Origin: Mytilus edulis
Taxonomy: Eukaryota
Assembly: GCF_963676685.1 (NCBI RefSeq)
Contig: NC_092346.1
Coordinates: 93,434,001 to 93,498,000, forward strand
Length of the DNA stretch: 64,000 nucleotides
Reading direction: 5' to 3'
Below, in pieces: positions 22,868 to 51,407 of the stretch. A program made the position numbers and the translations under genes. Within the stretch, counting starts at the first letter, position 1. Each line of letters begins with the position of its first letter. A model generated the notes under the pieces. That model saw nothing but the letters and a program-made list of their open reading frames with translations, made no database searches and was not told the origin of the DNA.

Positions 22868-23115
22868 CTACACAAGCGATGCTTTGGTGCATTTTTCGAA
22901 GGACAAAAGAGGTTTAAAGAATTTGTTAGTGTCCTTATTACAAATTTCATCATCGAAATGATCACAAGTGCACTTGCTAGGTGACCAGTATGTTGATGAT
23001 CCGCAGGTTTGAAAAACCAATTTTCCATTCGAACATTGATAAAACTTAGAACAGTCATTTTTGTCTTGAAAGTATGCTTCACTTTGTGGATCATCCTTGC
23101 AATCAGGTACACAAT
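22868..23115 (-). CDS. Gene A last exon: chitin-binding type-2 (CBM14/peritrophin-A) domain and stop
   Basis: DCVPDCKDDPQSEAYFQDKNDCSKFYQCSNGKLVFQTCGSSTYWSPSKCTCDHFDDEICNKDTNKFFKPLLSFEKCTKASLV*; classic DCxxFYxC...C...W...C...C pattern; not in the frame shown by the ORF track. Confidence 0.93.
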
Positions 23116-23621
23116 CTATAAAACAGAAAATGTGGATGTAAATGACTCCCTGTCTCTCTCCCTGTCTAATACATGTATATTATTACGTCGAAAATAAATG
23201 ATCAATACTTAATTGTAGAATTAAACATGAAAAACAAAGACCAACTTTATCCCGAATCATTCATACTTCAAATCTAATGGTTTTGATTATTTATATTTAT
23301 CTTAATATATTTCCCTGTGTAACAAATGAATTCATGAATCCAAGAGTTTATCTAAATTTGCGTATTCTAATATTTTATCAGCTTAACGAAGAAAATGCAA
23401 GAATGAGATCTAAAGGAATTGTTTTGCCTTTACTCTTAATGTTATTTTTGTCTCTAAAAGCTACATTGTTTTTGCCATACGTTTAGTCCGTGGCGTGATC
23501 GATGTCAACGACTGAACTTGAAAACTGTTAGCACGGACCCACTTACATATTTTTGTGTTTGGCAATTGCGGGTCCATAATTATCAGGTGTTGAAAATGGT
23601 CAATATATTACTAGTACTTAC

Positions 23622-23930
23622 CACCTTCACATGCAGGTATAAGGATCGTAGATGTCAGGTTATCAGCAAGTCCCGAATCCGTCATTAGTGGAACACAAGA
23701 TATAGTCATATTTCCAGATAACCAAGAAGCAGGAATTATCGCGTCAGCTGAGACAGTGGTGCCACTTTCCTGATGATTGTCGCTACATACATTTATGTTA
23801 GGTATCATACGTGAGGATCCACCATCGTTCACAAACAAGGCCAAAGAGATGGCCACGCAAGTTTTTATCATCTCACAATGAACATGAATGCTGTCATTAA
23901 TTCGTGAAACACTGTGCTGTAGCTGTGGGT
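23622..23930 (-). CDS. Gene A Ig-like domain 2 exon (DPQLQHSV...IPACEG)
   Basis: 309-nt phase 1-1 exon; IHVHC...MTISC cysteines about 60 aa apart; conserved in the paralogue. Confidence 0.88.
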
Positions 23931-24878
23931 CTTTTATAAAAACAAAGAAAATAAATTATCATATTATAAGCTCGCCTTGGGAATATGAGGTCTTTGGTGG
24001 TATACGATTTGAAAATTGATATTTTCTGCGTTTACATTAATTTAAACACATGTTTTTGTTTAAGAGGTTAATAGTTGGAACAGAGTTATCGGCTAGGAGT
24101 TAGACTGATGTGTCTGGAATTAGTGTTATATCTGAACTGCAAATTTACCTTTTTGCGTTTTTTGTCTTTGATTTATGAGTTGAAATACCCTTTTGGTATC
24201 TTCCGCCCTATTTTTCCGTGTTAACAAGCACGTAGATATCTGACTCGGTATGCCAGGCCATAACAAAGCAATGTTCATATACACAACAAATTAATCTGTT
24301 ATCGTCCAAATGTTCATGAAACTATTGCCACACTATTATTAACATAATTTTTATCCTTCTTCTCATCATCGGATAAAGAAGTATAACACCTTAACTAATC
24401 ATAATACTCAGCCTTACATATTGCAGTAAACTATATCACAATAAAGTATTCTTACCAAATAAAGGGCCGGGATTTTCGAAAGAGAAAACAAAGAGAGAAA
24501 ATAAAAGTATGAAGACATAAATAGAAAAAGGACAGGAAACTTTGTAACCAATAGTTAAAATCTCCAACTTTCTTATATCTAAGTTGCTGGTTATATCACA
24601 TTTTAAAAGAAATTGTACCAATTCAGGATTTTGAAAGTTGTTTTCCGTTTGTTTGGTGTGTTAGAATTTTATATGTTGTCATTTGATAAAGAGCTTTCCG
24701 TTATGAAATTTCTGTGAGTTAAGTATTTGATGTTTTTGAACTTTAGAAGTTGCCATTTGATAAATAACTTTCCGTTTTGAAATTTCCTTGAGATAATAAA
24801 GAGAGAAAATACCAATGTGAAGACAGGAATAGAAAGAGGACAGAATAGTTATCAAAGGTACCAGGATTATAATTTAGT

Positions 24879-24920
24879 ACGCCAGACGCGCGTTTCGTAC
24901 ATAAGACTCATCAGTGACGC
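24879..24920 (-). ncRNA. Minimal type I hammerhead ribozyme motif inside an insertion of about 105 bp
   Basis: GCGUCA-CUGAUGA-GUCUUAUGUAC-GAAA-C GCGC G-UC^UGGCGU: intact core, palindromic stem III loop, short stem II. Confidence 0.75.
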
Positions 24921-25265
24921 TCATATCAACATATTTATAAAGCCAAACAAAGACAACTTTGCAGCCAAAAGTAAAAATCAATAAGTTTGTTATATCTCAG
25001 TTGCTGGTAATAACACCTTTTAGAATAAATTGTATCAATTCAGGAACTTGAAAGTTGTTTTCCGTTCGTTTGATGTGTTTGAACCATATATGTTGTCAAT
25101 TTGATAAAAACATTTCGTTTTTAAAATTCATTGAGTTCGGTATTTTTGATATATTATATACATGATCCTGTACGACATCACAATAGAAGAAATAGTTCTA
25201 AAATCGTGTTATTTATAACAAAGTCTTTGTATTTCACTATTTGTTGTTTCTACTTATGTGCATAC

Positions 25266-25601
25266 CTTTTAATTTTATTTCAAATTCGCTAGACGAAACG
25301 TTTCCGTCATCATATTCTATCGTGATCTCGTAAATCCCAACACTATCACATGTTGCTCTCCCCATCATGAAACGTAATTGTTGGTCAGTTCTTGAAGAGT
25401 TGTAGTAGATTATCCAACCCCTATTTTGTTGCTCAAACTCATCAGATGAAACATTGACTGAAAAACCTTGAAGTACACTCAAATATTGAGATGACAACTG
25501 TCTGACATGTATACCTGACGGGTTACTGGTAAATTTCTGTGTATAAGGAATACACATTTGTTCTCCTACCCTTGCGATAGATATATCGTTTTCACATTTA
25601 T
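25266..25601 (-). CDS. Gene A Ig-like domain 1 exon (DKCENDIS...FEIKLK)
   Basis: 336-nt phase 1-1 exon; alternating beta-strand pattern; GEQMCIP B-strand and a V-set-like ATCDSVGIYEI (D-x-x-G-x-Y) motif; conserved in the paralogue. Confidence 0.88.
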
Positions 25602-26682
25602 CTAAAACGACAATAAATTTAAATAACAACAGGTTGATTTGAACAGCACATATAGGCTCAAAACAACCCTTACCATACAGAAAAACTGAAATCGATTGGT
25701 GACTTGATCGTGAATCAACCGAGTATATAAGGATACACATATTATTAAATACATGAATATTGACAGCTACAATGTTGATATTATAGTAAGACTATTTTCA
25801 TAGTATTCAACCATATTTGATGAATAAAAATGCACAACAAAAAGTCCCCCCAAAAGATAAATAAATAGTTTTAAACACGTGTTGATACAAATTCTATATT
25901 ACAAATTAGCATACTAATACTTCGCCGTATTCTTAACTATTCATACTAAATTGAGATCAAGAAATTCATCTTAAAAACAAAATAAACAAGGTAAAACGTA
26001 ACATCAAATAAACTAAAACTGTAAAAATCTCAAATTAAAAAAGAAAAGAAAAGAATAAATATAGATTCTTTTTTATACATCACAACTCTTATAATCACAA
26101 ACTCTTTTAAATGACAGTATCAAGTCATGTTAATGACAGTTTTTATCCTTTTGTTTCATGTGTTTGAGCTTCTGATTGTGCCATTTAATAAAATTAATTT
26201 CATTGTATTTTTATTATTACTTTTTATAATACTTAGCTGATTTATATATTCTGTCTTTTAGTGCTTAAGTATGACAAAGTGCATTTAAAGTGTTGCTTAA
26301 TGAATAAACCGCATCCACATTGTGTTTGAATCGATGCATCGTTTGAATGAATATCAAATATAGATGATAGAGGTTTTGTTTAATTTAAACTGTCGAATTT
26401 GTGTGAAGTACTTGACTCCAAAAGTTAACAAAATCTCAATCATTCATGCCATTACATGTAATGCTCTAGTGCATGCATATTTTAAAAAGGCTTATCGTTT
26501 TACCACATGCTTATGCATTTTCGTTATTTGAAAGTTCGATAATGTATGAAAATCCTATATTAATTCATGTTTATGAATACGTAATACAAGCTTACAGAAA
26601 TGTTTATAACAAACCAACAATAATTTAATTTGTAAATCATCAAGTTTTTAGTTAATCTACCAGTACCAATGGAAAAACTTAC

Positions 26683-26733
26683 CCGGAAAATCCGGAAGGT
26701 CATCTGTAATAGCAGTTGGAGTATCTTTCGAAC
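26683..26733 (-). CDS. Gene A stalk exon (GSKDTPTAITDDLPDFP)
   Basis: attccag| 51 nt G|gtaagt; phase 1-1; conserved at 63800-63850. Confidence 0.88.
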
Positions 26734-28169
26734 CTGGAATGGGACATTTTAAATAAAGAAATTTGACACAAACTTTTAAAGGATTTCTGCATGTCAAACA
26801 AAAGATACTATTTTTTAATGCAATTTTAATTATTTTTTTTAAAATACAGCTAGCATTTTTAAGAGACAGCGTTAAATAATTGGGACATTCAAACTAGCCA
26901 AAAAAAAAATGGCATCGACTAACACATCATGCTACACATAAACACTTAATAAGATAAAGCGTGTTGTAGTTTGCATACTGTTGTTTGTGTTTTGGTCGTT
27001 TATCCCTTTTTGCCATGGCATTGACATTATGAATTTGACTTGAGTTTGATTATTGCTTTGGATTCTTTCGCCTCTCTTTTATCGTGAAAACTACAACACA
27101 ATTTACTGGTACTACATATAAGATTTAACACGTATAAATCTAATATATGTGAAGCCTAGACAACGTATGGTTTTTCTACTTGTAATATAACATTTATAAC
27201 TTTTCCAAATAAAATATTTTTAGTGAAAATCAACAATTTGTTATTTGAAGTAGACGACATAACAATTCTGCGAATCGACATTCTTTCACAATATCATAGA
27301 TAAATCTCTATGGAAACATTATCAATGTCACAAACAAAGCCTTATACAAATCATTTATAATGTATAACAATTTGAATGCATAACTATCACGGTTTTACTT
27401 GAGAATAATTTAAGCACATCTGAATGCGTAACAAGCACGGTTTCATTTTAAAAAAGGAATAAACAGTACACACACTCTTCAAATAAGACTGATCGAGCAT
27501 TTCAATCTTCTTGGAAACTGAAATGGTTTTCATCTTATCGCAGAATAAAAGGCGAAAAATTACACGATGTTAGTTTACAGTATTTTGATTATTAGCAATT
27601 AATAAAAAGTGATTGTTCTGAAATTCTATATCTCATATTTGAAAAGAAATAAAATTAGCGCAAATAAAAATAATATGATCCCTGGTAAATTCATACAACG
27701 ACTTTCAACTATCAAAAGACAACTTAGCATGTTTAAACACAAAACAAACCGTCAATAAAAACATATGAATAATTAAGTTTGGTTTTGTTGAACTGCAACA
27801 TTTGCACGATATCTGTTTATTGATGTATGCTTTCAATAGTTTGTGTCCGTTTATGGATAATCTAGTTCATGTTCTATTTAAATTAATATTGAAAGAGAAA
27901 TAATCGTCCAGATTTCTATCAACACAAATTTGAAAGATATATTTCGCAGTATCAATTACGTTTGGCCTCTATTGATTTTTCTTGATGCACATTATGTGTT
28001 GTTACCTGTTTTTGTTTATTAGCACTAGACGTCAGAAATGCAGAATTATGAAAAAATAAAGTTTACAGATTTGAAAAAGACATGTGGAAAAAAATCTGAA
28101 AAATATAAAGAAAAAATAATTGTCAAAATAAGATTGTGTTCAGACATTACCCTGAACCTGATGCGACGA

Positions 28170-28345
28170 GAGGTTTAGCTTATATAAAACCTGGTTTAAT
28201 CCATCCTTTTCTTCATAGAAAAATGCACGTACCAATGCGGGAATATGACAGTTGTTATCCATTCGTTTGATGTGTTTGAGCTTTTGATTAGGGACTTCGT
28301 TTTGAATTTTCCTCGGAATTCAGTATTTTTGTGATATTACTTTTT
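28170..28345 (+). repeat. Interspersed repeat family; copies at about 42815-43010, 55350-55610 and 55715-55800
   Basis: Shared ATATGACAGTTGTTATCCATTCGTTTGATGTGTTTGAGC...TTTTCCTCGGAGTTCAGTATTTTTG. Confidence 0.75.
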
Positions 28346-28561
28346 TGAATTATTCGAAACTCTAAGGATTTCTACCACAATTTTTTTTTACCTTAGCTGT
28401 ATTTGACAAAAACGTTCGCAATGTTTCGTTCGTCCTCGTTGCTCTTCAACTTCGTATTGTAATTTTGCCTTTTTACTTTTAGATTCCCGCGTCAGCTGAT
28501 ATCTTTGATGAGTTTCATAGACATAAAACACTTACTTTATATGGTTATTTGCTTTACATAC

Positions 28562-28652
28562 CTAAGAGATATTTATTTTGGATGACCCATGCCGCAACGC
28601 CGGATATACATCCAATTAAAACAATAAGAATCATTATTCTCAAAGGGCAGTT
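28562..28652 (-). CDS. Gene A transmembrane/signal-anchor exon (NCPLRIMILIVLIGCISGVAAWVIQNKYLL)
   Basis: tatttcag| 91 nt G|gtatgt; phase 0 to 1; about 19 uncharged hydrophobic residues. Confidence 0.85.
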
Positions 28653-29907
28653 CTGAAATAAAAATAAAACAAAAATAATAAAATAAGATACTATAGGAAA
28701 GAGAAGGACAGCGATGAATAAAGCAAGACTCAGATTGGCAAATAATTCTTAGGACGCAGACGAGTTATTTTTATCTACTGTACATTTTGATGGACATAAC
28801 ATATACTCAGTTTTCAAATGAAATTGAGATTTCTATAACATGTTATTTGGCATATTTCAAAGTGGAACCAGCTCTTCAATATTTATAAAATTATTATGAC
28901 CACTACATTATTCATAAAAAGGAATTCATGTATTGTTTGTTATCTTACTATCATACTTTTTTTTTAAATTTCTACTGTAAACACTGGCCTCGTCGCATGT
29001 TTGTATCTAAAGTTTTATGAATTTCTATCAAACCAACGCTTCATCAGTTTGAATATTCAAAACAGTTGTATTTTAAAAAAATTCTGCGAAGAGAGACAGT
29101 AATGTCGAAAGGGAAAGTCAAACTCTTACTTCTAAAACCAAATGATTTTTTTATGGCAAACAAAAAGATAAAAATCTCGAAAAAATAAGCAACACTGTAC
29201 AAAATAAAACATACAAAACTAAATACTGAATAACATCAAACCGACGAAACCAACCAGATTATAATCTTAGTTGATCTAGAAGAGTACGTAAATCCTGCTC
29301 TGCATTTTGTACATGTGGCACCCGTCGTGTTTCTTATTAAAGTACACCCGATGATAAAGATTTCTTTAAAAACACTATTTTGGAGTATGAAGTCTCTTGA
29401 ACTTTATTTCAAAAGGGGGAATGGATTCCTGTCTGAAACAGAATGAAACTCGCTAGTAAGATTTCATGGGGCATAATTTTTGATGCACTTAAATGTCATC
29501 ACAGACTTGTGATAGTTATTCTCTATTGAACTGTCATCCAGTTTAATTGTTTGCATAAGGGTTTGGGAGGAGAGATTAGGTCTGTTTGTAGTATTATTCT
29601 AGCATGTCTCCTTTGAAATTTTAAATATCATATTTAAACCCTGACAGCTACAACTTCTCCAAACTATACAACACTAATCAGCGATCAATTAGTGGTGAGA
29701 TTGACCATTAAAGCATAATTTTCTGAAGTCTAGATTTAAAAATTTCTTAATCTTTATTAGTAGATATAGCCTAAATGAAATTTCAAGCAGATCAAATAAA
29801 TTTGGTTTGACCATGTCAGGGAAAATTCAATTAAAATGCTAAGAGCATATTATCATCTTCAATTACAATAAATAGTTTGCTAGATGTATATTAAAAACAA
29901 AGCCTAC

Positions 29908-29937
29908 CTTTTTACTCTTGTAATGTTTTTCCAGGTC
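29908..29937 (-). CDS. Gene A juxtamembrane exon (DLEKHYKSKK)
   Basis: tatttttag| 30 nt AAG|gtaggc; phase 0-0; basic residues precede the hydrophobic helix. Confidence 0.75.
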
Positions 29938-31384
29938 CTAAAAATAAGAAGACTTATTAGATTTTCACTTCGATTGGCCTCTGAGACAAATATCCTTCTA
30001 ATGTATATATAAGAAGATGTGATATGAATGTCAATAAGACAACTAGCAATTCAAGTCCCAATTTGTAAAAGTAAACAATTATAGGTCAAAGTACGGACTT
30101 TAGATGCATGAGTTTTTATGTCAGTTGTTATTGGCGCTGAACAATCTGTCAGTACTCTCAGATCTGTACTTAGTGTCTTTTTATTATTGGGATATACAAG
30201 TACTCGGTCACGTCCACGTGTTTTTGTTGTATGTTTTTATATTTGTATTCATCTGATGAGTTAAGCTTTTTTTCAACTGATTTTTATAGTTTGTTCTTAT
30301 GTTGTACTTCTACCTAACTGTCCAGATTAGGTGAAGGGTTGCAATCTCGTTAACATGCTTAACCCCGCCTTATACTATATGTATGCGCCTGTCTAAAGTC
30401 AGAAGCCTGTAAATCAGCTGTTGTTGTATGTCGTATGCTGTATTTGGTAAAACTTTAATGAATTTTGGTCCTCAATGCTCTTACACTTCGTACATTATTT
30501 GGCTTGTTTGGAGACGAAACGCGAGTCTGGCGTAAATACAAAATGTAATCCTGGTATCTATGATGAGTTTATTTGCTGTGTTACATAATTGTTTTTTGTT
30601 ATTTTATTGTACATTGATTAAGCCCTTTTCTCGTTTAAATTGTTTTACATTTGTGATTTCGGGGCCTTTAATAACTGACTATGTTGTATGGGCTTTACAC
30701 ATTGTTAAAGGCCATACACTGATTTATAGCTGTTAATTTCTGTGTCATTTGGTTTCTTGTGGAGAGTTGTCTTATTGGCAATAAAACCACATCTCTTTTT
30801 TTTTTATATTCAACAGCCTTGTCTCACACCGTACAACAAGCTATAAAAGTCCCAAAACCCAAAAAGTGTAAAACCATTCAAGCCTTCCCCCTTACCTGAA
30901 ACAATAGTGTGATATCACAACACAGAAAGACACACTATAACATATTAATCAAAAGATATATAAAAAAAATCAGTAAGCGTTCACTGAACGAATAATTATT
31001 AACTATGACACAATGTAAAAACAAAATTAATAAAAAAGAAGGCGAGATGTAAATCAATATATTAAAGACAATCATAACCTTAACCAAAATAGTTTTAGTT
31101 ACTTAGATATAACATCGAATGATCATCACTCAACCTGCAACAAAACGCTAACTCAAACATAATTAGATACAAAAGCACCGTAATGACAAAATGTTAAGGC
31201 TTGTTTATTTAGCGTTATCCGTTTAAAGTTTAAAGAATTGATTGAATTTGTTCAGTTGATTGCAATAAATCATCTCTTATTTTTGTTACGTTTCAGTAGA
31301 AATAATCGCACTGTCGTTTAATGGAAACAACAGCTATCTTTTTATTGGAGGCAAAATATTTGTGTTGCAATATGAACCCCCTTT

Positions 31385-33040
31385 CAAAAGAGGGCCGAAA
31401 GATACCAGAGGAACGGTCAAACTCAAAAATCGAAAATAAACTGACAACGCCAGGGCTAAAAATTAAAAAGACAAACATACAAATAATAGTACACAAGACA
31501 CAACATAGAAAACTATATAAAGACTGAGCAACTGATTTCATCTTGAAGTTCACTATTTGGAACTCTTGGATTAAAAGCTTCATTGTGAGCATCAACCCTG
31601 TATCAAAGAAATCAAGATAGGAAATACAAGCGCAGAAATATCGTATCAATTATACTTCGTATGCAGGCGCTCCTGGAAAGTTGCTACAAAGAGATGGAAC
31701 GTTCACAATTGGGAAGCTGAAATCATCTAGTTTGTCGTAAAGCTTTGTTTTTTTAACCGAACCTGATGGTCAATTTCTAGATGTAAGTAAAGAAATGAGG
31801 CAGACTTAACTGTATCTGTTGTATCCTTTATCTCTAGTTCGATGGGATAGATGTGTTCAACATAGTCACCAAATTTTGAATTATTTAGTGAGAGAATATC
31901 ATCTATATAGCAGAAAGTAAAGTTGAAGGATATTGCTAACTTATTTTTCATTCTAAGAAGTTCCTGTATGAAGTCAGACTCGTAATGATAAAGAAACAAG
32001 TCGACAAGAAGAAGGGCACAATTGGTTCCCATCCGATAGTTTGTTGAAAAACACGTCCTCCAAACGTAACAAATATGTTGTCAATCAAGAAATCAAGCAT
32101 CTTGATAATGTCAGTTTCAGGGAATTTTTTGTTTGAATAAGTGTGATCCTTTTCAAAGTAGGATTTATACCCCCTAAGACAAGATACTTGTATCTTCATT
32201 TGTCATTCTTTTATTATGAAACGAAGCAATACCAACTCTTTCAATTTGTCTATTAGTTTGGAATGGGGAATAGTTTTGTAAAAGAGGGACGAAAGATACC
32301 AAAGGGACAGTCAAACTCATAAATCTAAAACAAACTGACAACGCCATGGCTAAAAATGAAAAAGACAAACAGAAAAACAATAGTACACATAACACAACAT
32401 AGAAAACTAAAGAATAAACAACAAGAACCCCACCAAAAACTAGGGGTGATCTCAGGTGCTCCGGAAGGGTAAGCAGATCTACTTGGAAAGTAGAAAAGTC
32501 AAATGTTTTGATATTATTGCAAGAGTCTTTGATTGTACAAATGTATGTACTCTAAAGGATCTGTGGATTGTTTTAGTAACCTCATCTGATTCAAGCCACC
32601 TCTACAATAGGCAGTTTCACAATAACTTTGGAGTACGGCTTTGATCGCTGATAAAATAGGTGTTAATAATTTAGAAAGAGGTGTCGTGGAGCACTTGGAA
32701 GACCTAGCATATTTGTCATGGAGGTAGGACAAGTGTTTTGCAACATTTGTGTCTTTACAGATTGACGTAGCATGGGCATTGATAAACCCATTCTGTTTCT
32801 CATTTCTGAGTTGAATCAATGACCTCACAGCGTTAATCAATTATGAAAGAGTATCTACGTCTTCGTTCTCGCGCTTAGCCCATAATCCTCAACTGAATGC
32901 ATCAGTATTTTGAATTTGTATTTCCAATTAATGGATTTATGCTCACGATATTTCGGACCTTTGGATAACACAATTCAGAGGGAAGTGTTGTTGACAATGT
33001 TGAGGTCACCGGTAATAACGTGGCTAGCCGGATTGATTAA
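31385..33040 (-). mobile_element. Decayed Penelope-like element (RT fragments plus terminal repeat), with a nested terminal-repeat copy at about 32279-32481
   Basis: ORF pieces FLIDNIFVTFGGRVFQQTIG, MGTNCALLLVDLFL and YIDDILSLN are PLE-type RT motifs; several frameshifts and deletions. Confidence 0.85.
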
Positions 33041-34711: not shown

Positions 34712-34825
34712 CGAGTAATCAGAGGAATCAATATTCGAAAATAACCTATTGTCTGCAATATAACTTATATCCTCATTGTTGTTATGCAGGTTTATTCCAG
34801 TAGGAGGTTCAATGACAGTTTCAGT
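34712..34825 (-). CDS. Gene A duplicated exon, copy 2 (TETVIEPPTG...DSSDYS)
   Basis: ctttccag| 114 nt TCG|gtaatt; phase 0-0; inside ORF 34601..34849. Confidence 0.75.
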
Positions 34826-35418: not shown

Positions 35419-35544
35419 CGAGTAATGGCTGTTTCTTCCAGAGGAATAAATATTCGGAAATAACCTATTGTCTGCAATACAAGTTATATCCTCATTGTTG
35501 TTAGGCAGGTTTATTCCAGTAGGAGGTTCAATGACAGTTTCCTT
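35419..35544 (-). CDS. Gene A duplicated exon, copy 1 (KETVIEPPTG...RNSHYS)
   Basis: ttaacag| 126 nt TCG|gtaatt; phase 0-0; near-identical to 34712-34825, differing by a 12-nt in-frame indel. Confidence 0.75.
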
Positions 35545-37311
35545 CTGTTAAGTAAAATAAACATTCAACACATTTTAGAGAAAGGCCAATTTTGAAGGTA
35601 CGATAAAAGTTATGACAATAAAGGAATTGGAAGATATGTTTTAGAATCATTCCAGGTTCTGATTGTGACCACGTTTTCATTCTATATATCCTATATATGT
35701 TTTGTCGTTTTCATAGCAACTAATTCTGGTATTTCGTATATTTATTTGTTAGCGGAATGCAACTTATATGGGTAATTTGTTTGGACGTTTATTTTGAAAT
35801 TGACACTGATTTTTTAGTGTAAGTATTTTATATACGTGATCTTCTCGCTGCGCTGAAGACCCATTGGCTGTTTTGGACTGTTTTTCTGCTTATTAACCAG
35901 GTTGTTGTCTCTTTTAAAAAATCCCCGTTTCGACTCTCAATTTTATTGATGTCAATAGAAAAGTCCTCACGTATGAACTATGATATTCTTATCTAAATTT
36001 CTCAGTGACTTTGTGAGTGACAAATCAGCATACCTACATTGTACTTATTCAATACCACATCAACATTAACATTTGTTTATGTATGTTGCTACTTGATATC
36101 ACTTTTCAAATGTAAAGGGCATAGCATGCAAAGCATGGCATGGTATAAATATGTAATCACTTGGTATAGCTACTATTCTCCAACATAATAGCTAAACAAC
36201 AATAAGGAGTGAAATTGTTTGGCTTGTAAACTTATTTGAAGATCGTGTCATGCTGATCATTTTGCTTTTTCAAATTTAATGTTGAATGTCCCTCTGGTAT
36301 CTTTCGCTCCTCCTTAAATCTATCTCTTATAGTTTTTTTTAGTCTTATTCAAAGAACACAAAAGATGATATTTAAAGGGCAATAACTCCAATAAGTAGTT
36401 ATATTACGATTGTAGCATTTCAACTCAATTGTAGATCTTTTCTTGTTGATGTAAAATTGCCCTCTTTATGTCTTTTTACAATTTTCAAGATAATAGGTAA
36501 AAATAAAAATAAAATGTGCATTTGATGGTAACCCCGAGAAGAAAATGACTGACAGTTTTGGCGTACATATACAGTATGTAGATCTCATCATTTTGAACAT
36601 AGATATTGGAAGATGTGGTATGAGACAACTCTCCATCCAAGTACAATTTTCTCAATGTATAGTGGGTTTATAAATTAAAGACAAAACTAACATTTTACCC
36701 CTTTGTTATATTTGTAGACATGTCGATTGCAAAGCGAGGTCATTGAACACATTTGTAAAACCACATACCCTTTTGATGATTGTGGCCAAGTTCGTTAAAT
36801 TTGGCACATTAACCACAGAGAAGATGATCTTTGAAAAAATCAACGGACGATAGACGATGACAGACGACGTAAGACAAGTTAGTGATTGGAAAAGCTCACA
36901 TTGCTCTTTCGTGCTAAGTGAGATTTTAAGAACACAACAAAGTCTTAGTGTATGTATTTTATAATTTACTCACACTTAGACTATAAAGAATAGGTGTCCA
37001 TTTTTCACTATCTCGCCTAAGGAATTTCCATTCAGTCTATTAATATAGCAAAGTAAAGATATATATTTATCATGGTCTTTATTTATTGATATTTCAAAAC
37101 ATTACAAATCAAGACATATGCTAAGTAAATGTCTGAGAAAAAAACATATCAAGATAACTGTTAGAAAAGATACAAAAATTGTAATTGTAATTCACGTCAA
37201 TCATTTGATTATTTACCTATATTACTACATTGAGAAAATATTCTTAAATTTAACTACAGAAAATCAAATATTTCTGTTATATAATTATTTTAACATACTG
37301 GCGATACTCAC

Positions 37312-37365
37312 CTTTCGTGGTTGATACTGCTGTTCACCAATAGGGGTTCGGAATGTAGGTATATT
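37312..37365 (-). CDS. Gene A exon (NIPTFRTPIGEQQYQPRK)
   Basis: tatttcag| 54 nt AAG|gtgagt; strong splice sites; phase 0-0. Confidence 0.75.
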
Positions 37366-40152: not shown

Positions 40153-40260
40153 CGAGTGTAAACTATCTTCTGGAATTGCGTCAATCGATCCACTATCTGC
40201 ACATCCATGATTGTCGTGCCCTTTTTCCTCACAATAATTATCTTCAATTTCGTTTTTAGT
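40153..40260 (-). CDS. Gene A cassette-type exon (TKNEIEDN...IPEDSLHS)
   Basis: ttatag| 108 nt TCG|gtaatt; phase 0-0. Confidence 0.75.
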
Positions 40261-41211: not shown

Positions 41212-41346
41212 CGAGTTTAAACTGTCCCCTGGAATAGTTTGATCCGATTCACCATCTGCATTACCAGCCTTACTAAGCCCTCTTCCTTCATTCTGAGTGT
41301 TGTTATGCAAACTAGTTCGATTACTGGCTTTAATTTCTTCTCCAGT
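41212..41346 (-). CDS. Gene A cassette-type exon (TGEEIKAS...IPGDSLNS)
   Basis: ctatag| 135 nt TCG|gtaaac; phase 0-0; related to exon 40153-40260. Confidence 0.75.
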
Positions 41347-41742: not shown

Positions 41743-41814
41743 TTTTGGTAATAGGGAATTCTCATACGGCCCGCTATGATGACTAGCAGTCAAACAATTA
41801 TTACAACTTTCTTC
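41743..41814 (-). CDS. Gene A exon (EESCNNCLTASHHSGPYENSLLPK)
   Basis: tttttacag| 72 nt |gtaagc; phase 0-0. Confidence 0.75.
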
Positions 41815-43687
41815 CTGTAAAAATCCAAATGTTTATTGTAATACAATTATAATAGTTTATCTATATGTTTCAGTGGTTGCATATTATATTTGAGAATATG
41901 AATGATTCAGAATACTATCGTATGAATATGAAAACCTTCTATATCCATAACTGTATCTTAAAAATAAGAAGATGTGGTATGTGTGCCAATGAGACAACTC
42001 TCCATCCAAGTCACAATGTACAAGCAGTAAACCGTTATAAGTCAAAGAAGGCCTTCAATGTGTAGGCCCTGCTCACATCGAACAGCAAGCTATAAAGGGT
42101 CCCACTTGATATTAATCGAAAGTTGTATTAGCTACTGTTTTAACGGATTGTCGTTCTTATAACGATAAGACGTATTTTTACCCCAGAGAACATAAATTCT
42201 TAGTTGAAATGACTCATATTTTATCATTTATGCGTTTTGTATTGGATCGCCAATTGTAACATATGAGCAATGTTTTCGTTAGGTTAACATTAGGACTGAG
42301 ATAGAAAAATATCTCCATAACCCAACTGAGTAGTCCCGATTGTATTTACATCTAAGAAGAGCAACCCCTACAAAAATGACCCTAGTCTTAATTTTCAAAT
42401 TGCAGGCAGATGCATATATATACTTTAATTTACACAATTTCATTTTAACTTTTGTATATGTTGTGCTGGCATAAACAAACTCATCATAGATACCAGGACT
42501 GAAATTTAAAAGATTCCCCTCACTATGAATATACCATTGTGTTATGATTTTCATTATAAGTATGGCAAATTCTTAATAAAACAAAATTACTACCGTCTTA
42601 AATTAGTATGGAGCTTTAATTATTTTTTTTGTGTATTTAATGATACGCTTTCAAATAGCCCAAGTTGAAGGTCACTCTAAAACATTTAATACATATACTT
42701 CGCTTATAGGAGAACGACTCTTTCTTTTCTGTAGGGATAAGAGAAAATCATGTAAATTCTATGTAGTTATTTCTTTTACAAGCTATGTAACTTTAAGTGA
42801 CACTTTTTATAAAGAGAGGTGAGATGTTTAGCTAGCTATAACACAAGGTTTAATCTATAATTTTTCACATTAAAAAATGCCTGTAACAGGTCAGGAATGT
42901 GACAGTAATGATAAATGCGTTTGATGTGTTGGAGCTTTGGATTTTGCCATTTGATTAGGGACTTTTCATTTTGAATTTTCCTCGGAGTTCAGCATTTGTA
43001 TAATTTTACTTCTGTGGAGATTAAGAAATCTTCACTTTTTCGAAACTTTACACTGTAATTGTAAAGTCCAAACCAAAAATGACTAAGTTGGATGCGAAAT
43101 ATATACCGAACTACTTGTTGTTGCATTGTGAGCCATTAATGTCATTTCATACATTTGTACCTCAGTCATTGTAATCAGGAGTTCGGTATTTTTGTGACTT
43201 TACGTTTTTTTTACGGAAATGTGCATTGAAATGCCGTCATTGAGTTAACGTGGCCTGATTCGAGGTTTCAAACATTGTTCTTTATTTTTTGCGTACAGAA
43301 CTATTTTTTTATGTCGAATATTAACTCCATATCTGTATACTTCCTCATTTATAAATGGAAATATTTCGTGCCAGAGATAACTACATGTAGTTCTGTAGAT
43401 GCATCTTTCGACAAAATCGCTATTAAAACTGCGTATTTATAGACCGTTCAAATAAGAAATAAAGCAGAAAAACTGCACCCTACTTTTACAAAGTTTTGAT
43501 AAGCAGGTTCCAAAAACAAACCCAACGTTTTACTGAAGTTTTATAATGTAGGCTATAATGTTTTGTTGGTATGGGCATGGAACATTCAGTGAACGCGCGT
43601 ATCATTCCTTACAGTTTATTAAAATATAAGATGGAAACATGAACCAAATTTGAAATGCAGCAATTTTATAATTAATGAAACACTTGC

Positions 43688-43844
43688 CTGACACTGACTG
43701 CAACATTGACTGTCTGTACTTTTAACACTACTTTCAATTGAGTTTGATAGCTGATTTTTTACTTTAACAGACTCAAAGCAAGTATATGATTTATCTGATC
43801 CAGTACTATCTTTACTGTCTGTACTGATTGTGCTTCTGCCAATT
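43688..43844 (-). CDS. Gene A exon (IGRSTISTDSK...SQCCSQCQ), GC donor
   Basis: 157-nt open Ser/Thr-rich frame; acceptor ttttgcaag|; donor CAG|gcaagt. Confidence 0.7.
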
Positions 43845-45120: not shown

Positions 45121-45274
45121 TAGGACTCAAATCTATAGTGGGTTCCAAATCTATGGCAGATTCCTAATCTATGGCAGATTTTTTTACAATCCTAATCTAT
45201 GGCACTTTGTGAAATAAACATTTCATAATGGTCAACCAAAATGAAATGTAAGTGATGAATTCATATACCTTGAT

Positions 45275-45872: not shown

Positions 45873-46160
45873 TGATAATACAAACGGCCCTTTGAAAGTC
45901 GATTGTAGGTTACTATATTCAACCGGACTTTTTATTGGACGTAGATTTTAGGAACGGAGGTCAATATGAGTTAAACAGTTTAAACAATAATAAAAAAAAA
46001 TCACAACAGATTAACTTTTGTTACATACCACATCGACGTGATTAATGGTGATATTTTAATTATTTTCCTGAATCGCATGGACATTTATTAAATATTCATT
46101 TCTAATTATACAAATTCTTAATTTCAATTAAACCTTGAAAAGAGATTTAGAATGACTTAC

Positions 46161-46179
46161 GTTTGAGCATGGTTGACAT
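46161..46179 (-). CDS. Gene A micro-exon (DVNHAQT)
   Basis: catttcag| 19 nt |gtaagt; phases 1 and 2 exactly bridge the flanking exons. Confidence 0.65.
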
Positions 46180-47703: not shown

Positions 47704-49464
47704 ATGTATATAATTCCAACCATATGGAGAAAAGCCATCATATGTCCAATCTTGAAGGACCCGTTATCAGATCTCCGAGTACCAATGAACTACAGAGGTA
47801 TAAGTCTATTGTCGTGCACTAGCAAATTGTATAGTTCTTTTATTAATCAACGGCTCGTCAGTCACCTTGATAATAATGATATTCTTGCCGACGAACAAAA
47901 TGGGTTTAGAAAAAACAGATCGTGTGAAGACCATATATTTACTTTAAATAGTGTTATAAGAAATAATAAATCAGTATTTGTGGCATTCATCGATCTTAAG
48001 AAATGCTTTGATTTTATTGACAGGGATATGATGTTATACAAACTTTTGCTGAACAAAATTGATGGGAAGTTATACAACTCTGTCAAAAGTATATACCAAA
48101 GTTCTGAGTCCTGTGTTCGTATAAACGGTAAACTAACATCGTGGTTCTGCTGTAAAACTGGTGTGAAACAGGGAGATAATTTATCACCGACATTGTTCTC
48201 CATATTTATAAACGATCTTGTACAAGAGATTAATGACCTTAATCTTGGTGTAGACTTACTTGAAACGAAGGTATCATTATTATTGTATGCGGATGATAAA
48301 GCGTTAGTTGCAAAGTCGGCTGAGGATCTTCAGTGTATGCTGAATACACTTCACCAATGGTGTAAACGTTGGAGGGTGTTAATCAATACAGATAAATCTA
48401 AGTGTATTCATTTCAGAAAACCAAGAACCAAAGAAACTAATTTCGAATTTACAATTGGTAAAAACAAACTGGAGAAGGTTGAAAATTACAAATATTTAGG
48501 GATTACATTCAGTCATAACGGAAATTTCAAAACCAATGTCGAAAATTTGTCGAAAGGCGGTGGAAGAGCACTAGGAACAATCATAGCTAAAATTCACAAC
48601 AATAAAGACTTCGGATTCAATGCCTACGAAAAACTGTATTACTCGTGTGTAGTTCCAATCTTAGATTACGCCTCAAGTGTCTGGGGATACCGAAAATTTC
48701 AAACAATAGACAATATTCAAAACCGTACAATACGATATTTTCTTGGTGTTCACCGTTTTGCGCCTACTCTCGCCTTACATGGTGATGTTGGATGGATCCC
48801 TAGCCAGTTTCGAAGATGGACAAACATGGTGAGGTATTGGAACAGACTAGTCAAGTTTGAAGATGATCGCATAACGAAGATCGCTTTTAATGCAGACTAT
48901 AACCGTTGCACCGACAATTGGTGTAGCGAATTGAAGGACATTTTCTGTAAACTTAATCTAGAACATTATTTTGATTCAAAAACAGCTGTTAATTTGAAAA
49001 CTGTAGAAATGAACATTCAGCAACTTTATTCAAACATATGGAATGACAATATACAACAAGTACCAAAACTTCGTACCTATGTAACTTTCAAATCTGCCTT
49101 TAATCAGGAACTGTATATAAAACTAAACTTAACCAAAGTCGAACGCTCGCATTTAGCACAATTCAGGTGTGGAATATTACCTCTGAGGATAGAAACAGGA
49201 CGATATATAGGTGAAAGACCAGAAGAAAGACTTTGCAAATTTTGCACTGCAGACGTGTCAGAAACTGAAACTCATTTTTTACTAGACTGTACATTCTATT
49301 CTGATATACGAGAACATGTTTTTGGTGAACTTTTGTTAACTACTTCCTTTGTTTCTATGAACATTAATGAAAAACTTATTTTTTTAAATATTAGCCATAC
49401 TCGAAAACTAGCCAAATACATTGTACAGGCATATTCTAATAGACGAAATTTTGTTTACAAATAG
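47704..49464 (+). CDS. Non-LTR retrotransposon reverse transcriptase ORF (5'-truncated ORF2)
   Basis: 586-aa open frame with NYRGISLLS, EQNGFR, FIDLKKCFD, GVKQGDNLSPTLF, YADD, YKYLG and a C-terminal CxxC...HFLLDC motif; no endonuclease domain. Confidence 0.95.
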   Translation: MYIIPTIWRKAIICPILKDPLSDLRVPMNYRGISLLSCTSKLYSSFINQRLVSHLDNNDILADEQNGFRKNRSCEDHIFTLNSVIRNNKSVFVAFIDLKKCFDFIDRDMMLYKLLLNKIDGKLYNSVKSIYQSSESCVRINGKLTSWFCCKTGVKQGDNLSPTLFSIFINDLVQEINDLNLGVDLLETKVSLLLYADDKALVAKSAEDLQCMLNTLHQWCKRWRVLINTDKSKCIHFRKPRTKETNFEFTIGKNKLEKVENYKYLGITFSHNGNFKTNVENLSKGGGRALGTIIAKIHNNKDFGFNAYEKLYYSCVVPILDYASSVWGYRKFQTIDNIQNRTIRYFLGVHRFAPTLALHGDVGWIPSQFRRWTNMVRYWNRLVKFEDDRITKIAFNADYNRCTDNWCSELKDIFCKLNLEHYFDSKTAVNLKTVEMNIQQLYSNIWNDNIQQVPKLRTYVTFKSAFNQELYIKLNLTKVERSHLAQFRCGILPLRIETGRYIGERPEERLCKFCTADVSETETHFLLDCTFYSDIREHVFGELLLTTSFVSMNINEKLIFLNISHTRKLAKYIVQAYSNRRNFVYK

Positions 49465-49706
49465 CTTAATATCTATATATTTTTATTTTAAAATTAATTA
49501 AAGGTTAACTTTCGTCAACAAAAAGATAATTTCATGAATAATTTGTTATTTTGAAGAACGTGATATATTGTTTTAAAATTACTTAATTTCATTTGAGGTG
49601 ACTTATAGGTCCATTGGGCCGGGTGTATTAATATTTATCATATATTGTATATTTATAATCTGTACATATTTACACATGTCACTATAATAAATAATTTACT
49701 TACTAT
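47704..49706 (+). mobile_element. 5'-truncated LINE (CR1/L2 group) in an intron of gene A, antisense to the gene
   Basis: RT ORF, then a 3' UTR ending in AATAAA and a short (TTAC)n tail near 49690-49706. Confidence 0.9.
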
Positions 49707-50004
49707 ACAACCACAATTGATCCGATACGTACAATAACCAAAAGAATAATTGACACATTATCGACATGGACATTAATTTACTGTTATTGCAATTCTACAA
49801 TGGCATGGTTTTTTTCTGAAGTTATTAACGTTTTTTTACACTGAATAGATATTCGATTTTAGCTTTTGTATATGTTAGTCTTAAAAACATGATTTATTAT
49901 ACAAATATTGCTTTCGTGAAAAGTCAATATTCAAAATTATTAAATAAGGAAAAGTTATTTTCTTCAAGGTCGATAGGTCTGTCGTTTCTCTTAGATCTGT
50001 ACTT

Positions 50005-50360
50005 AGTATTGTTATGCGTTTACTTTTCTACATTGGCTAGAGGTATAGGGGGAGGGTTGAGATCTCACAAACATGTTTAACCCCGCCGCATTTTTGCGCC
50101 TGTCCCAAGTCAGGAGCCTCTGGCCTTTGTTAGTCTTGTAATATTTTAGTTTTAGTTTCTTGTGTACAATTTGGATATTAATATGGCGTTCATTATCACT
50201 GAACTAGTATATATTTGTTTAGGGGCCAGTTGAAGGACACCTCCGGGTGCGGGAATTTCTCGCTACATTGAAGACCTGTTGGTGACCTTCTGCTGTTGTT
50301 TTTTTCTATGGTCGGGTTGTTGTCTCTTTGGCACATTCCCCATTTCCATTCTCAATTTGA
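50005..50360 (+). repeat. Interspersed repeat family; another copy at 4425-4760 and fragments at about 35150-35245, 35835-35945 and 54300-54420
   Basis: AAACATGTTTAACC..GCC...CCTGTCCCAAGTCAGG...CACATTCCCCATTT..ATTCTCAATTT shared between copies. Confidence 0.8.
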
Positions 50361-50556
50361 TTAGTGTCTTTTGCGTTTTTTGTTAACGTTTCTATGTGCC
50401 CTCTATCGATCTAATGAGTTGAGCACCTTGAAAATGAATTTTTATAGAGCTGTCTCATTGATAACCATACTTCCTCTTTTTATTTTGATATCTTACGTAT
50501 ATCTTTAAACTTTGTACCGATTATGTGTTTTTTTAAGAAGTGAATGGTGAAACTAC

Positions 50557-50592
50557 CTGAAGACGCCATTTTTTCTCTAGATTTCAGTCGGT
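50557..50592 (-). CDS. Gene A exon (DRLKSREKMASS); may be an alternative start exon with ATG in AAAAATGGCG context
   Basis: 36-nt phase 1-1 exon; donor CAG|gtagtt; in-frame ATG with an A-rich Kozak context; weak acceptor. Confidence 0.55.
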
Positions 50593-51241
50593 CTAGTACA
50601 TAACGGCAGTCGTATCATATGTCTCATAGTGAAACAGAAGCTGACAAAATGACCTTAAACATAGAAAGAAAGATAATATGGTAAAATAAATACACATGAA
50701 AAGTCTTTAATATATCTCTTTTTAATTTCTGACATTATTTGTCTGATTTGAGAAACATACATAAATACGAAGCTTTAGACGCAAATTTACACACTACAGT
50801 CATTCAATTCACACAATAAAGTACTAATAATATAAAAGAATAATCCATTTATAGCTTGCTGTTCCGTGTAAGCCAAGGCACCGTGTTGAAGACCTATTGT
50901 TGTTAACCTATAATGGTTTTCCTTTTCAAATTGTGACTTCGATGAGGAGCTGTCTCATAGACATTCATACCACAGCTTCTTATATCAATAAATCACGTCA
51001 AATTTAATGGTACACCCTATCAAGTTGAAGGCCGTATGGAGACCTATAGTTGCTAATTTCTGTATCATTTGGTCCTTTGTATGAAAATTGTTCAATTGGA
51101 AATCACACCACATTTTCTTTTTTATATATAAATTATTCAAAGGGTTTTCTACGTCAAGTATATGTATACTTAATATAATTAAAATCCCCAAGTAATGAAT
51201 GAACTATTGCAGTTTTTATAACCACTTGTTCAATATTTTAC

Positions 51242-51407
51242 CCGCATACAGATTCTTCAATGTACAATTGAGCATTGAAAAAGGGAAAATGTCTACTAGC
51301 AGATCCTGCCATGCCAGCTCCAGACTACATTTAAACTGATTGAAAACTGTTGTCTTCATCATATGAAAATCAAGCAAAATCTCACATTCATTACTTGAAT
51401 CTGACAT
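51242..51407 (-). CDS. Gene A candidate first coding exon (MSDSSNECEILL...KNLYA)
   Basis: ORF 51216..51407; acceptor tattacag| at 51414; donor G|gtaaaa in phase 1, compatible with downstream exons. No homology support. Confidence 0.5.

What the first reader, a model, noticed from the sequence alone, without database searches (positions are those of the whole stretch)
22868..51407. Membrane-anchored VCBP-like chitin receptor: type II TM protein with an Ig-Ig-CBM14 ectodomain
Seen: 16 exons splice into one frame of about 683 aa. About 340 hydrophilic residues are followed by KHYKSKK-NCPLR, a single hydrophobic helix, a Pro/Thr/Asp stalk, two Ig-sized phase 1-1 exons and a clear CBM14 domain. 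Known: Ig-Ig-chitin-binding is the architecture of the secreted VCBPs of amphioxus and Ciona, and gastropods have secreted Ig-plus-lectin proteins (FREP/CREP/GREP). Most Ig-superfamily receptors are type I. Inference: this is a protostome signalling receptor with type II topology that senses chitin. I know of no description of this architecture, but I could not search for one.
Basis: partly seen in the sequence, partly recalled or inferred. Interest (0 to 1): 0.9.

Follow-up and report, generated by a model that had tools for sequence, protein, structure and literature searches.

The report
Mussel membrane-anchored Ig-Ig chitin-binding protein
This is a real, expressed mussel (Mytilus) gene for a cell-surface protein that is anchored by its front end and holds two antibody-like domains and a chitin-binding domain outside the cell; public annotation lists it only as "uncharacterized", and its role as a chitin sensor remains an inference.

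Summary
The observation largely holds. A 16-exon minus-strand gene (start codon 50569, stop 22868) matches RefSeq XP_071161186.1, "uncharacterized protein" of Mytilus edulis (660 aa). It encodes about 297 hydrophilic residues with no known fold, one hydrophobic helix, a short Pro/Thr/Asp stalk, two Ig-sized phase 1-1 exons (336 and 309 nt) and a Pfam-supported CBM14.

The disputed 29908/28652 junction is present in assembled contigs of three probable RNA runs from three studies. The helix is therefore internal to the transcripts, not a leader that starts them. All homologues have a hydrophilic N-terminal extension and a single internal hydrophobic segment. Conserved cysteines and glycosylation sites lie only on the C-terminal side. 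This supports type II topology.

Structure prediction shows an IgV-like then an IgC-like domain, most like the B7/butyrophilin, TCR and BARF1 arrangement. This is not the V-V pair of VCBPs.

The family is a tandem cluster found only in Mytilus among named sources. It is under moderate purifying selection and shows no hypervariable loops.

Chitin binding and signalling are inferred, not shown. Two M. galloprovincialis paralogue models carry a cytoplasmic HEPN domain, which I could not verify.

Verdict: a new variant of a known kind, of moderate interest.

The parts
50557..50569 (-). First coding exon: ATG GCG TCT TCA G (MASS plus 1 nt), followed by donor GT
   Evidence: Pattern search on the window. 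It matches the N-terminus of P0033 and of paralogues P0019 and P0002. Not checked against reads.
46161..46179 (-). Coding exon 2 (19 nt, ..DVNHAQT), with flanks cag| and |gtaagt
43684..43844 (-). Coding exon 3 (161 nt; IGRSTISTDSKDS...SQCQA), Ser/Asp/Cys-rich part of the cytoplasmic tail
   Evidence: Exact match to P0033 residues 12-64. Splice sites shown.
41743..41810 (-). Coding exon 4 (68 nt; SCNNCLTASHHSGPYENSLLPK)
41212..41346 (-). Coding exon 5 (135 nt, phase 0-0; TGEEIKASNRT...IPGDSLNS). First copy of a repeated tail module.
40153..40260 (-). Coding exon 6 (108 nt, phase 0-0; second, diverged copy of the same module, ...IPEDSLHS)
37312..37365 (-). Coding exon 7 (54 nt; NIPTFRTPIGEQQYQPRK), a motif shared with the paralogues
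36974..37036 (-). Coding exon 8 (63 nt; TEWKFLRRDSEKWTPILYSLS)
35419..35544 (-). Coding exon 9 (126 nt; KETVIEPPTGINLPNNNEDITCIADNRLF...). First copy of a duplicated exon.
34712..34825 (-). Coding exon 10 (114 nt; TETVIEPPTGINLHNNNEDISYIADNRLF...). Second copy.
29908..29937 (-). 30-nt microexon DLEKHYKSKK, the basic stretch next to the membrane on the cytoplasmic side
   Evidence: Sequence. The joint 29908/28652 is present in X1, X2 and X4. Only one copy exists in the window.
28562..28652 (-). Signal-anchor (transmembrane) exon NCPLR-IMILIVLIGCISGVAAWVI-QNKYLL(G). The RefSeq model extends it to 28558.
26683..26733 (-). Stalk exon (G)SKDTPTAITDDLPDFP. The acceptor varies: 26733 (typical of the family), 26742 (contigs of X2 and X4) or 26786 (RefSeq). 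All three keep the reading frame.
   Evidence: The donor at 26683 is joined to 25601 in X1.
25266..25601 (-). Ig1 exon (336 nt, phase 1-1): V-like Ig domain with nine predicted strands
   Evidence: Contig depth is about 80-130 in three runs.
23622..23930 (-). Ig2 exon (309 nt, phase 1-1): C-like Ig domain with seven predicted strands
22868..23115 (-). Last exon: CBM14 (peritrophin-A) chitin-binding domain, a 23-residue tail with one conserved Cys, and the stop codon
   Evidence: Pfam PF01607 at E = 1.5e-10. Sequence matches to Der p 23 and to chitinase CBM14 domains in the PDB. All its cysteines are conserved.

Best explanation
The gene encodes a single-pass type II membrane glycoprotein of Mytilus.

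Anatomy:
- The N-terminal ~297 residues stay in the cytoplasm. They are hydrophilic, built from phase-0 exons (some of them duplicated), and have no detectable fold.
- One hydrophobic helix (IMILIVLIGCISGVAAWVI) follows a basic microexon and acts as an uncleaved signal-anchor.
- Outside the cell lie a short Pro/Thr/Asp stalk, an IgV-like domain, an IgC-like domain and, at the tip furthest from the membrane, a CBM14 domain.

How it most likely works: the protein binds chitin or related GlcNAc polymers at the cell surface.
- Shown: the exon structure, the internal position of the helix in transcripts, the domain folds at the level of models, and the CBM14 homology.
- Inferred: the topology, the chitin binding, and any signalling through the tail.

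I rank a surveillance or immune-type surface receptor slightly above a pure matrix tether. The gene sits in a lineage-restricted tandem family whose tails vary, and two paralogue models carry a HEPN domain.
For: Gene model:
- The exons match XP_071161186.1 (P0033).
- All splice sites are canonical.

Transcripts:
- The joint 28652/29908 is seen in three runs of three studies. The contigs continue about 104 nt further upstream.
- Paralogues have full-length open frames of 552-682 aa on Logan contigs of only 2.2-2.9 kb, which must therefore be spliced mRNAs.

Topology:
- 14 of the 15 family members scanned have one strong internal hydrophobic segment and no hydrophobic N-terminus.
- K/R residues precede the helix.
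- Six N-x-S/T sequons (12/19 to 21/21 conserved) and 17 cysteines (at least 90% conserved) lie only on the C-terminal side of the helix. Sequons and cysteines in the tail are not conserved.

Domains:
- CBM_14 at E = 1.5e-10, with PDB sequence matches to CBM14 domains.
- The AlphaFold2 model has two beta-sandwiches with pLDDT about 75-90.
- Foldseek's best hits are two-domain V-C Ig chains at E about 1e-6.
- VIA-align gives Z about 10 to BARF1, BTN3A1 and PD-L1 over residues 61-272. Ig1 alone aligns to TCR V domains at rmsd 2.7-3.5 A over about 100 residues.
- An independent Atlas model of the exact protein matches V-set plus C-set clusters at TM 0.51-0.61.

Selection: exons are 93-95% identical to the neighbouring paralogue against 79-89% for introns, and dN/dS is 0.35-0.52.
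Against: - No experiment or read evidence shows the transcription start. The raw-read RNA run gave zero depth on the exons.
- Ig1-exon contigs are about twice as deep as the contigs of the helix exon. A second transcript form without this helix exon is therefore not excluded, although split alleles would give the same picture.
- No Pfam Ig model matches either Ig exon.
- The tail has no recognisable signalling domain.
- The Ig1 loops are not hypervariable.
- Chitin binding rests on homology alone.
- The HEPN-tailed paralogue could not be found in this genome.
Confidence: 0.6

Rival explanations
1. A matrix tether rather than a sensor. The same type II protein would simply fasten epithelial cells to the animal's own chitin (shell organic matrix, gastric shield or gut mucus), with no signalling role. 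This parallels the way the VCBP chitin-binding domain binds host gut chitin.
For: - The tail has no signalling domain.
- Selection is purifying (dN/dS 0.35-0.52) and there is no CDR-like hypervariability.
- The CBD of VCBP binds host chitin-rich mucus (PMC5465252).
- Chitin-binding proteins are common in bivalve shell matrix proteomes (titles).
Against: - The family is a lineage-restricted tandem cluster with very variable tails.
- Two paralogue models have a HEPN_DZIP3 tail with an intact R-N-x3-H motif.
- The tissue of expression is unknown, because run metadata are coded.
Confidence: 0.3
2. A secreted VCBP-like protein. An alternative start at the helix exon, or cleavage in the stalk, would release a soluble Ig-Ig-CBM14 protein. 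The membrane form would then be minor or a precursor.
For: - MILIVLIGCISGVAA|W reads like a signal peptide.
- Ig1 contig depth is about twice that of the helix-exon contigs.
- One database fragment (P0001) lacks the helix.
Against: - In all three runs the helix exon is spliced to upstream exons.
- No homologue starts at the helix. Even the shortest have 40-75 residues before it.
- P0001 is a partial genome-derived model without a start codon.
Confidence: 0.1
3. A gene-model artefact. Two neighbouring genes, one for a disordered protein and one for a secreted Ig-Ig-CBM14 protein, would have been fused by prediction.
For: - The upstream exons are short, of low complexity and weakly conserved.
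- Only the microexon junction was checked with reads.
Against: - The junction is seen in three runs, and the contigs run on a further ~104 nt upstream.
- Transcript-derived full-length open frames exist for paralogues.
- The same exon order holds in the paralogues, and the frame stays open over 11 canonical junctions.
Confidence: 0.04

Closest known systems
[quoted passage not shown]
   Same: Two Ig domains are followed by a single C-terminal chitin-binding domain. The protein is a candidate for an interface between host, chitin and microbes (PMC5465252).
   Different: VCBPs are secreted and have two V-type domains. This protein is anchored by an N-terminal signal-anchor, has a ~297-residue cytoplasmic tail, and its domains are V-like then C-like. 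No sequence kinship was detected: an exhaustive search with Ig1 returned 18 hits, and every one for which a source gave an organism was Mytilus. There is no hypervariable region.
B7/butyrophilin-type IgV-IgC ectodomains (BTN3A1, PD-L1, B7-H6) and viral BARF1
   Same: These are the best structural matches to the two-domain unit: Z about 10 with 173-201 aligned residues.
   Different: They are type I proteins with IgV furthest from the membrane. Here the orientation is reversed (IgV next to the membrane) and a CBM14 is added. Sequence identity is only 11-19%. A shared fold does not show a shared function.
CBM14 / peritrophin-A domain proteins (chitinase CBDs, Der p 23, peritrophins, squid beak chitin-binding protein)
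   Same: The last exon is a bona fide member by Pfam score, by its conserved cysteines and by the core F-Y-x-C-x-x-G motif.
   Different: Those proteins are secreted enzymes or matrix proteins. None listed combines the domain with Ig domains and a signal-anchor.
Type II glycan-sensing receptors such as the Dectin-1 cluster of C-type lectin receptors
   Same: They share the topology: a cytoplasmic N-terminal tail, a signal-anchor, a stalk and a C-terminal carbohydrate-binding head (a review is listed; the comparison is from general knowledge).
   Different: The head here is IgV-IgC-CBM14, not a C-type lectin-like domain. No ITAM-like motif was established in the tail.
Gastropod FREPs (IgSF plus fibrinogen lectin domain)
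   Same: They are molluscan proteins that join Ig domains to a carbohydrate-binding domain, in expanded families (PMC5877582).
   Different: FREPs are secreted, carry a fibrinogen domain rather than CBM14, and are somatically diversified. No such variability is seen here.

Membership tests
VCBP | Two tandem N-terminal V-type Ig domains | tested here: not met
   Ig1 has nine predicted strands and aligns to TCR V domains (rmsd 2.7-3.5 A over about 100 residues, Z about 10). Ig2 has seven strands, and the pair aligns to V-C ectodomains. This rests on predicted models.
VCBP | Single C-terminal chitin-binding domain | tested here: met
   PF01607 CBM_14 at E = 1.5e-10, 41.5 bits against a cut-off of 22.1
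VCBP | Secreted, with a cleaved N-terminal signal peptide | tested here: not met
   The N-terminus is not hydrophobic and the single hydrophobic segment lies at residues ~303-321. The helix exon is spliced to upstream coding exons in three runs.
VCBP | Sequence kinship of the Ig domains with chordate VCBP V domains | tested here: inconclusive
   An exhaustive HMMER search with Ig1 gave 18 hits. Every hit for which a source gave an organism is Mytilus, several have no name, and the weak ones scanned with Pfam carry bacterial-type adhesin domains. No VCBP sequence was available for a direct profile comparison.
CBM14 (peritrophin-A) domain | Pfam model above the gathering score, with the six-cysteine framework | tested here: met
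   All cysteines of the domain are conserved in 16-17 of 16-17 family rows. The domain aligns to Der p 23 and to chitinase CBM14 domains.
CBM14 (peritrophin-A) domain | Binds chitin | not testable with these tools
   Needs a chitin-bead pull-down of the recombinant ectodomain.
Immunoglobulin superfamily | Ig-type beta-sandwich fold | tested here: met
   AlphaFold2 model with pLDDT about 75-90 in both domains. Foldseek probability 1.00 to Ig V-C chains. VIA-align Z about 10. Atlas model TM 0.51-0.61 to V-set/C-set clusters.
Immunoglobulin superfamily | Match to a curated Ig sequence model (Pfam ig, V-set, I-set or C-set) | tested here: not met
   No Ig family at E <= 1 for the exons or at E <= 0.01 for P0033 and its paralogues.
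Immunoglobulin superfamily | Canonical disulphide between strands B and F, and Trp in strand C | tested here: inconclusive
   Ig2 has conserved Cys in ...HVHCEM... and ...TISCVPL... (18/18). Ig1 has Cys in ...QMCIPY..., but its second Cys lies before D-S-V-G-I-Y, not after it. Neither domain has the Trp. Pairing was not read from model coordinates.
Type II (signal-anchor) single-pass membrane protein | No cleavable N-terminal signal; one internal hydrophobic segment of about 20 residues | tested here: met
   Kyte-Doolittle scan of 15 family members
Type II (signal-anchor) single-pass membrane protein | Positive-inside charge bias, and marks of an extracellular location only on the C-terminal side of the helix | tested here: met
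   DLEKHYKSKKNCPLR precedes the helix. Conserved sequons and cysteines occur only on the C-terminal side.
Type II (signal-anchor) single-pass membrane protein | Experimentally determined orientation | not testable with these tools
   Needs tag accessibility or a glycosylation-shift assay.
HEPN_DZIP3-bearing bivalve immune-type proteins | PF18738 domain in the protein | tested here: not met
   P0033 matches only CBM_14. The domain occurs in paralogue models P0024 and P0025 of M. galloprovincialis (E = 1e-38 and 1e-28), not in this gene.

The most novel reading that the evidence does not exclude
The Mytilus cluster is a family of type II IgSF pattern-recognition receptors. Chitin capture by the distal CBM14 would be relayed across the membrane to interchangeable cytoplasmic modules, including a HEPN RNase-type effector with an intact R-N-x3-H motif in some paralogues. 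That would be a transmembrane glycan sensor wired directly to a HEPN effector, which as far as I know has not been described in animals.
Probability: 0.12. Interest if true: 0.8.

Novelty: new variant of a known kind. Interest (0 to 1): 0.5.

Why it matters
Ig domains joined to a chitin-binding domain are so far a hallmark of the secreted VCBPs of protochordates. Membrane IgSF proteins are, from general knowledge, almost always type I.

A lineage-specific, tandemly expanded, expressed family in mussels puts the same parts on a type II anchor with a long modular tail. This looks like an independent invention of Ig-plus-chitin recognition in a protostome.

It also offers a tractable candidate for how filter-feeding bivalves deal with chitin, whether from fungi, diatoms or crustacean parasites, or from their own shell and gut matrices.

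The value is limited until chitin binding, the tissue of expression and any signalling have been tested.

Tried and rejected
- Pfam on the Ig exons and the helix exon gave only chance-level hits (G7C_C at E = 0.015; Hormone_4 at E = 0.074).
- The raw-read RNA run X21 gave zero depth on the exons, so there is no information on transcript starts.
- The HEPN-tailed paralogue was sought in this genome. The chromosome-13 copy has only the helix, stalk, Ig1 and Ig2 exons within 160 kb, with no HEPN, no tail exons and no CBM14. The fusion therefore remains unverified.
I could not inspect the M. galloprovincialis loci or the Logan transcripts.
- The other first-stage note (s1-838807, same chromosome near 47.6 Mb) was fetched and compared. 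There is no significant similarity (best E = 1.2), so by sequence it is a different family.
- The tail (residues 1-297) has no look-alike by language-model features, and structural TM-scores are at most 0.21.
- CDR-like hypervariability was sought and not found.
- Positive selection was sought between the two adjacent paralogues and not found (dN/dS 0.35-0.52).
- Five literature searches found no description of the architecture.
- The joint at 28559/26742 in X2 and X4 has non-canonical ends in this assembly. I could not resolve whether it reflects an allele or a paralogue.
- I did not send a joined spliced model of my own to any search or fold. The database protein P0033 served instead.

Full report
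**What is in the window.** The window is AT-rich animal DNA (about 31% G+C). The whole-genome tool places it at C3:93434001-93498000 of a 1.37-Gb assembly.

- an exon 25601-25266 of 336 nt and an exon 23930-23622 of 309 nt, both phase 1-1, with canonical AG and GT flanks;
- a last exon 23115-22868 whose translation matches Pfam CBM_14 at E = 1.5e-10 (41.5 bits, cut-off 22.1).

Upstream lie three more exons:
- a 51-nt stalk exon ending at 26683;
- the 91-nt exon 28652-28562, which encodes NCPLR-IMILIVLIGCISGVAAWVI-QNKYLL;
- the 30-nt microexon 29937-29908, which encodes DLEKHYKSKK.

**The gene is already in the databases.**
- An exhaustive HMMER search of 1.84 billion representative proteins with the Ig1 exon gave 18 hits, nine of them at E <= 1e-10.
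- Every hit for which a source gives an organism is from Mytilus (edulis, galloprovincialis, coruscus, trossulus). A second search adds M. californianus. The names are "uncharacterized protein" or "Chitin-binding type-2 domain-containing protein".
- One cluster member, P0033 (XP_071161186.1, M. edulis, 660 aa), sits on a contig of 107,021,180 bases, the same length as C3.
- P0033 residues 12-328 match the window letter for letter. They cover nine exons from 43843 to 28560. The remaining exons also match.

The coding model has 16 exons: 13, 19, 161, 68, 135, 108, 54, 63, 126, 114, 30, 91, 51, 336, 309 and 245 nt. That gives 641 aa. RefSeq uses a donor 4 nt further on and an acceptor at 26786, which adds 19 residues in the stalk (660 aa). 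The neighbouring paralogue lacks that insertion.

The start codon is at 50569 (aaaaaATGG, MASS|), and the paralogues begin the same way. The tail has 297 residues.

I did not send a joined model of my own to any search or fold. The database protein P0033 stood in for it.

I laid three contig sets that are probably RNA, plus one raw RNA run, on 25230-31200.
- The joint 28652/29908 has intron ends CT..AC on the plus strand, which is GT..AG on the gene's strand.
- It is present in X1, X2 and X4: three studies and two organism labels, at depths of 37-52.
- The contigs that carry it hold about 104 more letters upstream of the microexon, and these lie outside the stretch I laid.
- The joint 25601/26683 is also present.

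The helix exon is therefore internal to the transcripts.

Support from the homologues:
- Paralogues have full-length open frames of 552, 588, 669 and 682 aa on Logan contigs of only 2.2-2.9 kb. These can only be spliced mRNAs.
- In a hydropathy scan, 14 of the 15 family members have exactly one strongly hydrophobic segment. It follows 40-400 hydrophilic residues and is never at the N-terminus. The exception, P0024, has no strong segment.
- Lys and Arg residues precede the helix.
- Six N-x-S/T sequons (conserved in 12/19 to 21/21 rows) and 17 cysteines (at least 90% conserved) all lie C-terminal to the helix. Sequons and cysteines in the tail are not conserved.

Together these support an N-in, C-out (type II) orientation. 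It remains an inference.

Caveats:
- The raw-read run gave no depth on the exons, so transcript starts were not observed.
- Ig1 contigs are about twice as deep as helix-exon contigs. This could reflect split alleles or a second transcript form.
- In X2 and X4 the helix exon is joined to 26742 with non-canonical ends in this assembly. The frame is kept (four extra residues), but I could not explain the joint.

**Are the two exons Ig domains?** No Pfam Ig model matches them. The fold evidence comes from predicted structures.
- I folded P0001, an ectodomain fragment 92-97% identical to the window, with a 22-row family alignment. The mean pLDDT is 67.6, about 75-90 in the two domains. The first domain is a nine-strand sandwich and the second a seven-strand sandwich.
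- Foldseek's best PDB matches are two-domain V-C chains (TCR beta, RAGE VC1, shark UrIg) at E about 1e-6.
- VIA-align gives Z about 10 to BARF1, BTN3A1, PD-L1 and B7-H6 over residues 61-272. The first domain alone aligns to TCR V domains at rmsd 2.7-3.5 A over about 100 residues.
- The ESM Atlas holds P0033 itself. Its own model of residues 368-578 matches clusters that carry V-set plus C1- or C2-set domains at TM 0.51-0.61.

The unit is therefore IgV-like followed by IgC-like. Because of the type II anchor, the V-like domain lies next to the membrane and the CBM14 at the tip.

The CBM14 aligns to Der p 23, to chitinase CBM14 domains and to a squid beak chitin-binding protein.

**The tail.** Residues 1-297 have no Pfam match and no Atlas look-alike. 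The tail is built from short exons, mostly phase 0-0. Two pairs are duplicated: 41346/40260 and 35544/34825. Across paralogues the tail is the most variable part, from 40 to 400 residues.

Two M. galloprovincialis models (P0025, and P0024 = LOC143066215) carry an N-terminal HEPN_DZIP3 domain at E = 1e-28 and 1e-38, with an R-N-x3-H motif. This domain is greatly expanded in bivalve immune-type genes (PMC9646362). I could not verify the fusion:
- their counterpart in this genome, on C13, has only the helix, stalk, Ig1 and Ig2 exons within 160 kb;

**Family and selection.** The genome has seven copies of the Ig1 exon. Six form a tandem array on C3 spaced 37-120 kb apart, and one lies on C13.

The next copy lies partly inside the window, with exons at 63851-63792, 62374-62039, 60765-60457 and 59689-59432. 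It corresponds to P0019.

Between the two neighbours:
- exons are 93-95% identical and introns 79-89%;
- dN/dS is 0.35, 0.43 and 0.52 for Ig1, Ig2 and CBM14.

Both copies are therefore under moderate purifying selection. Variability across the family is spread evenly and is not concentrated in CDR-like loops.

**Interpretation.**
- Shown: an expressed 16-exon gene, an internal helix, a CBM14 domain, and two Ig-like folds at the level of models.
- Inferred: the type II topology (strong circumstantial support), chitin binding (homology only), and any signalling (no direct support).

The closest known architecture is the VCBP (PMC5465252). Three of its defining features are not met: secretion, a V-V pair and detectable kinship. 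The resemblance is therefore one of design, not of membership.

The main open choice is between a surface sensor and a tether to the animal's own chitin. The tandem, lineage-restricted family with interchangeable tails tips me slightly towards a sensor. The purifying selection, the lack of hypervariability and the empty tail keep the tether reading alive.

**Novelty.** Five full-text searches found no description of a type II Ig-Ig-CBM14 protein. The sequences themselves are public but uncharacterised. Two other first-stage notes on this genome report membrane-tethered Ig-plus-chitin-binding designs elsewhere. The one I fetched shows no significant sequence similarity. I rate this a new variant of a known kind, with interest 0.5.

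Noticed in passing
window 59432-63851 (- strand): The 3' half of the next paralogue upstream lies inside the window. Its exons are the stalk (63851-63792), Ig1 (62374-62039), Ig2 (60765-60457) and CBM14 (59689-59432). It corresponds to M. edulis protein P0019 (609 aa) and is 85-92% identical in protein to the studied gene.
   Followed up: yes
window 47704-49464 (+ strand): An intact 586-aa open reading frame with Pfam RVT_1 (E = 4e-38). It is a non-LTR-type retrotransposon copy lying antisense inside intron 1 of the gene. Further reverse-transcriptase-like fragments (YIDDIL) lie at about 31730-32080 on the minus strand and have no Pfam hit.
   Followed up: partly
window 28230-28429 and 30030-31029: Intronic repeats with contig depths in the thousands in all four runs, and with many loose ends and joints to each other. 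These are high-copy, transcribed interspersed repeats, not part of the gene's mRNA.
   Followed up: no
window 38829-38864 (- strand): MRPDVHVPKNEH is followed by gtaagt and preceded by tAG. This is the motif (MRPDIHVPKDK...) that paralogues encode just before NLPRFTTP. It is not in the RefSeq model of this gene. It may be a 36-nt exon that is skipped or decaying.
   Followed up: no
window 26742/28559 joint: Contigs of X2 and X4 join the helix exon to the stalk 9 nt upstream of the AG acceptor, with non-canonical intron ends in this assembly. The frame is kept (+4 aa). This may reflect an allele, a paralogue or a true minor splice form.
   Followed up: partly
G000:C13:63599064-63602855 (L008): The chromosome-13 paralogue (89% identical to M. 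galloprovincialis P0025 in Ig1) has only the helix, stalk, Ig1 and Ig2 exons. No CBM14 was found within 23 kb downstream, and no tail or HEPN exons within 135 kb upstream. It is a partial or decayed copy, or a case of presence/absence variation.
   Followed up: partly
P0001 (M. galloprovincialis fragment) compared with window 29908-29937: The M. galloprovincialis fragment has four tandem DLEKHHKSKK units where this window has a single microexon copy. P0005 and P0028 have three related KKE(K)ELEQN units. The basic stretch next to the membrane seems to vary in copy number.
   Followed up: partly
G000:C3:47641669-47641743 (L027): In the separate 'type II (Ig+CBM14)x2' locus noted by another first-stage reader, the only resemblance is a strand-F-like motif, KLTITLMVANCDSEGLYSVVV, against QLRFMMGRATCDSVGIYEITI here. 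Both share the unusual Cys before D-S-x-G-x-Y. E = 1.2, so this is not significant.
   Followed up: partly
P0033 residues 58-70 and 76-80 (window exons 43844-43684 and 41810-43): The tail holds a cysteine cluster, CCSQCQAKSCNNC...HH, and a conserved SGPYEN motif. The cluster is only partly conserved in the neighbouring paralogue. It could be a palmitoylation or metal site, or a YxN phosphotyrosine motif. None of this was tested.
   Followed up: no
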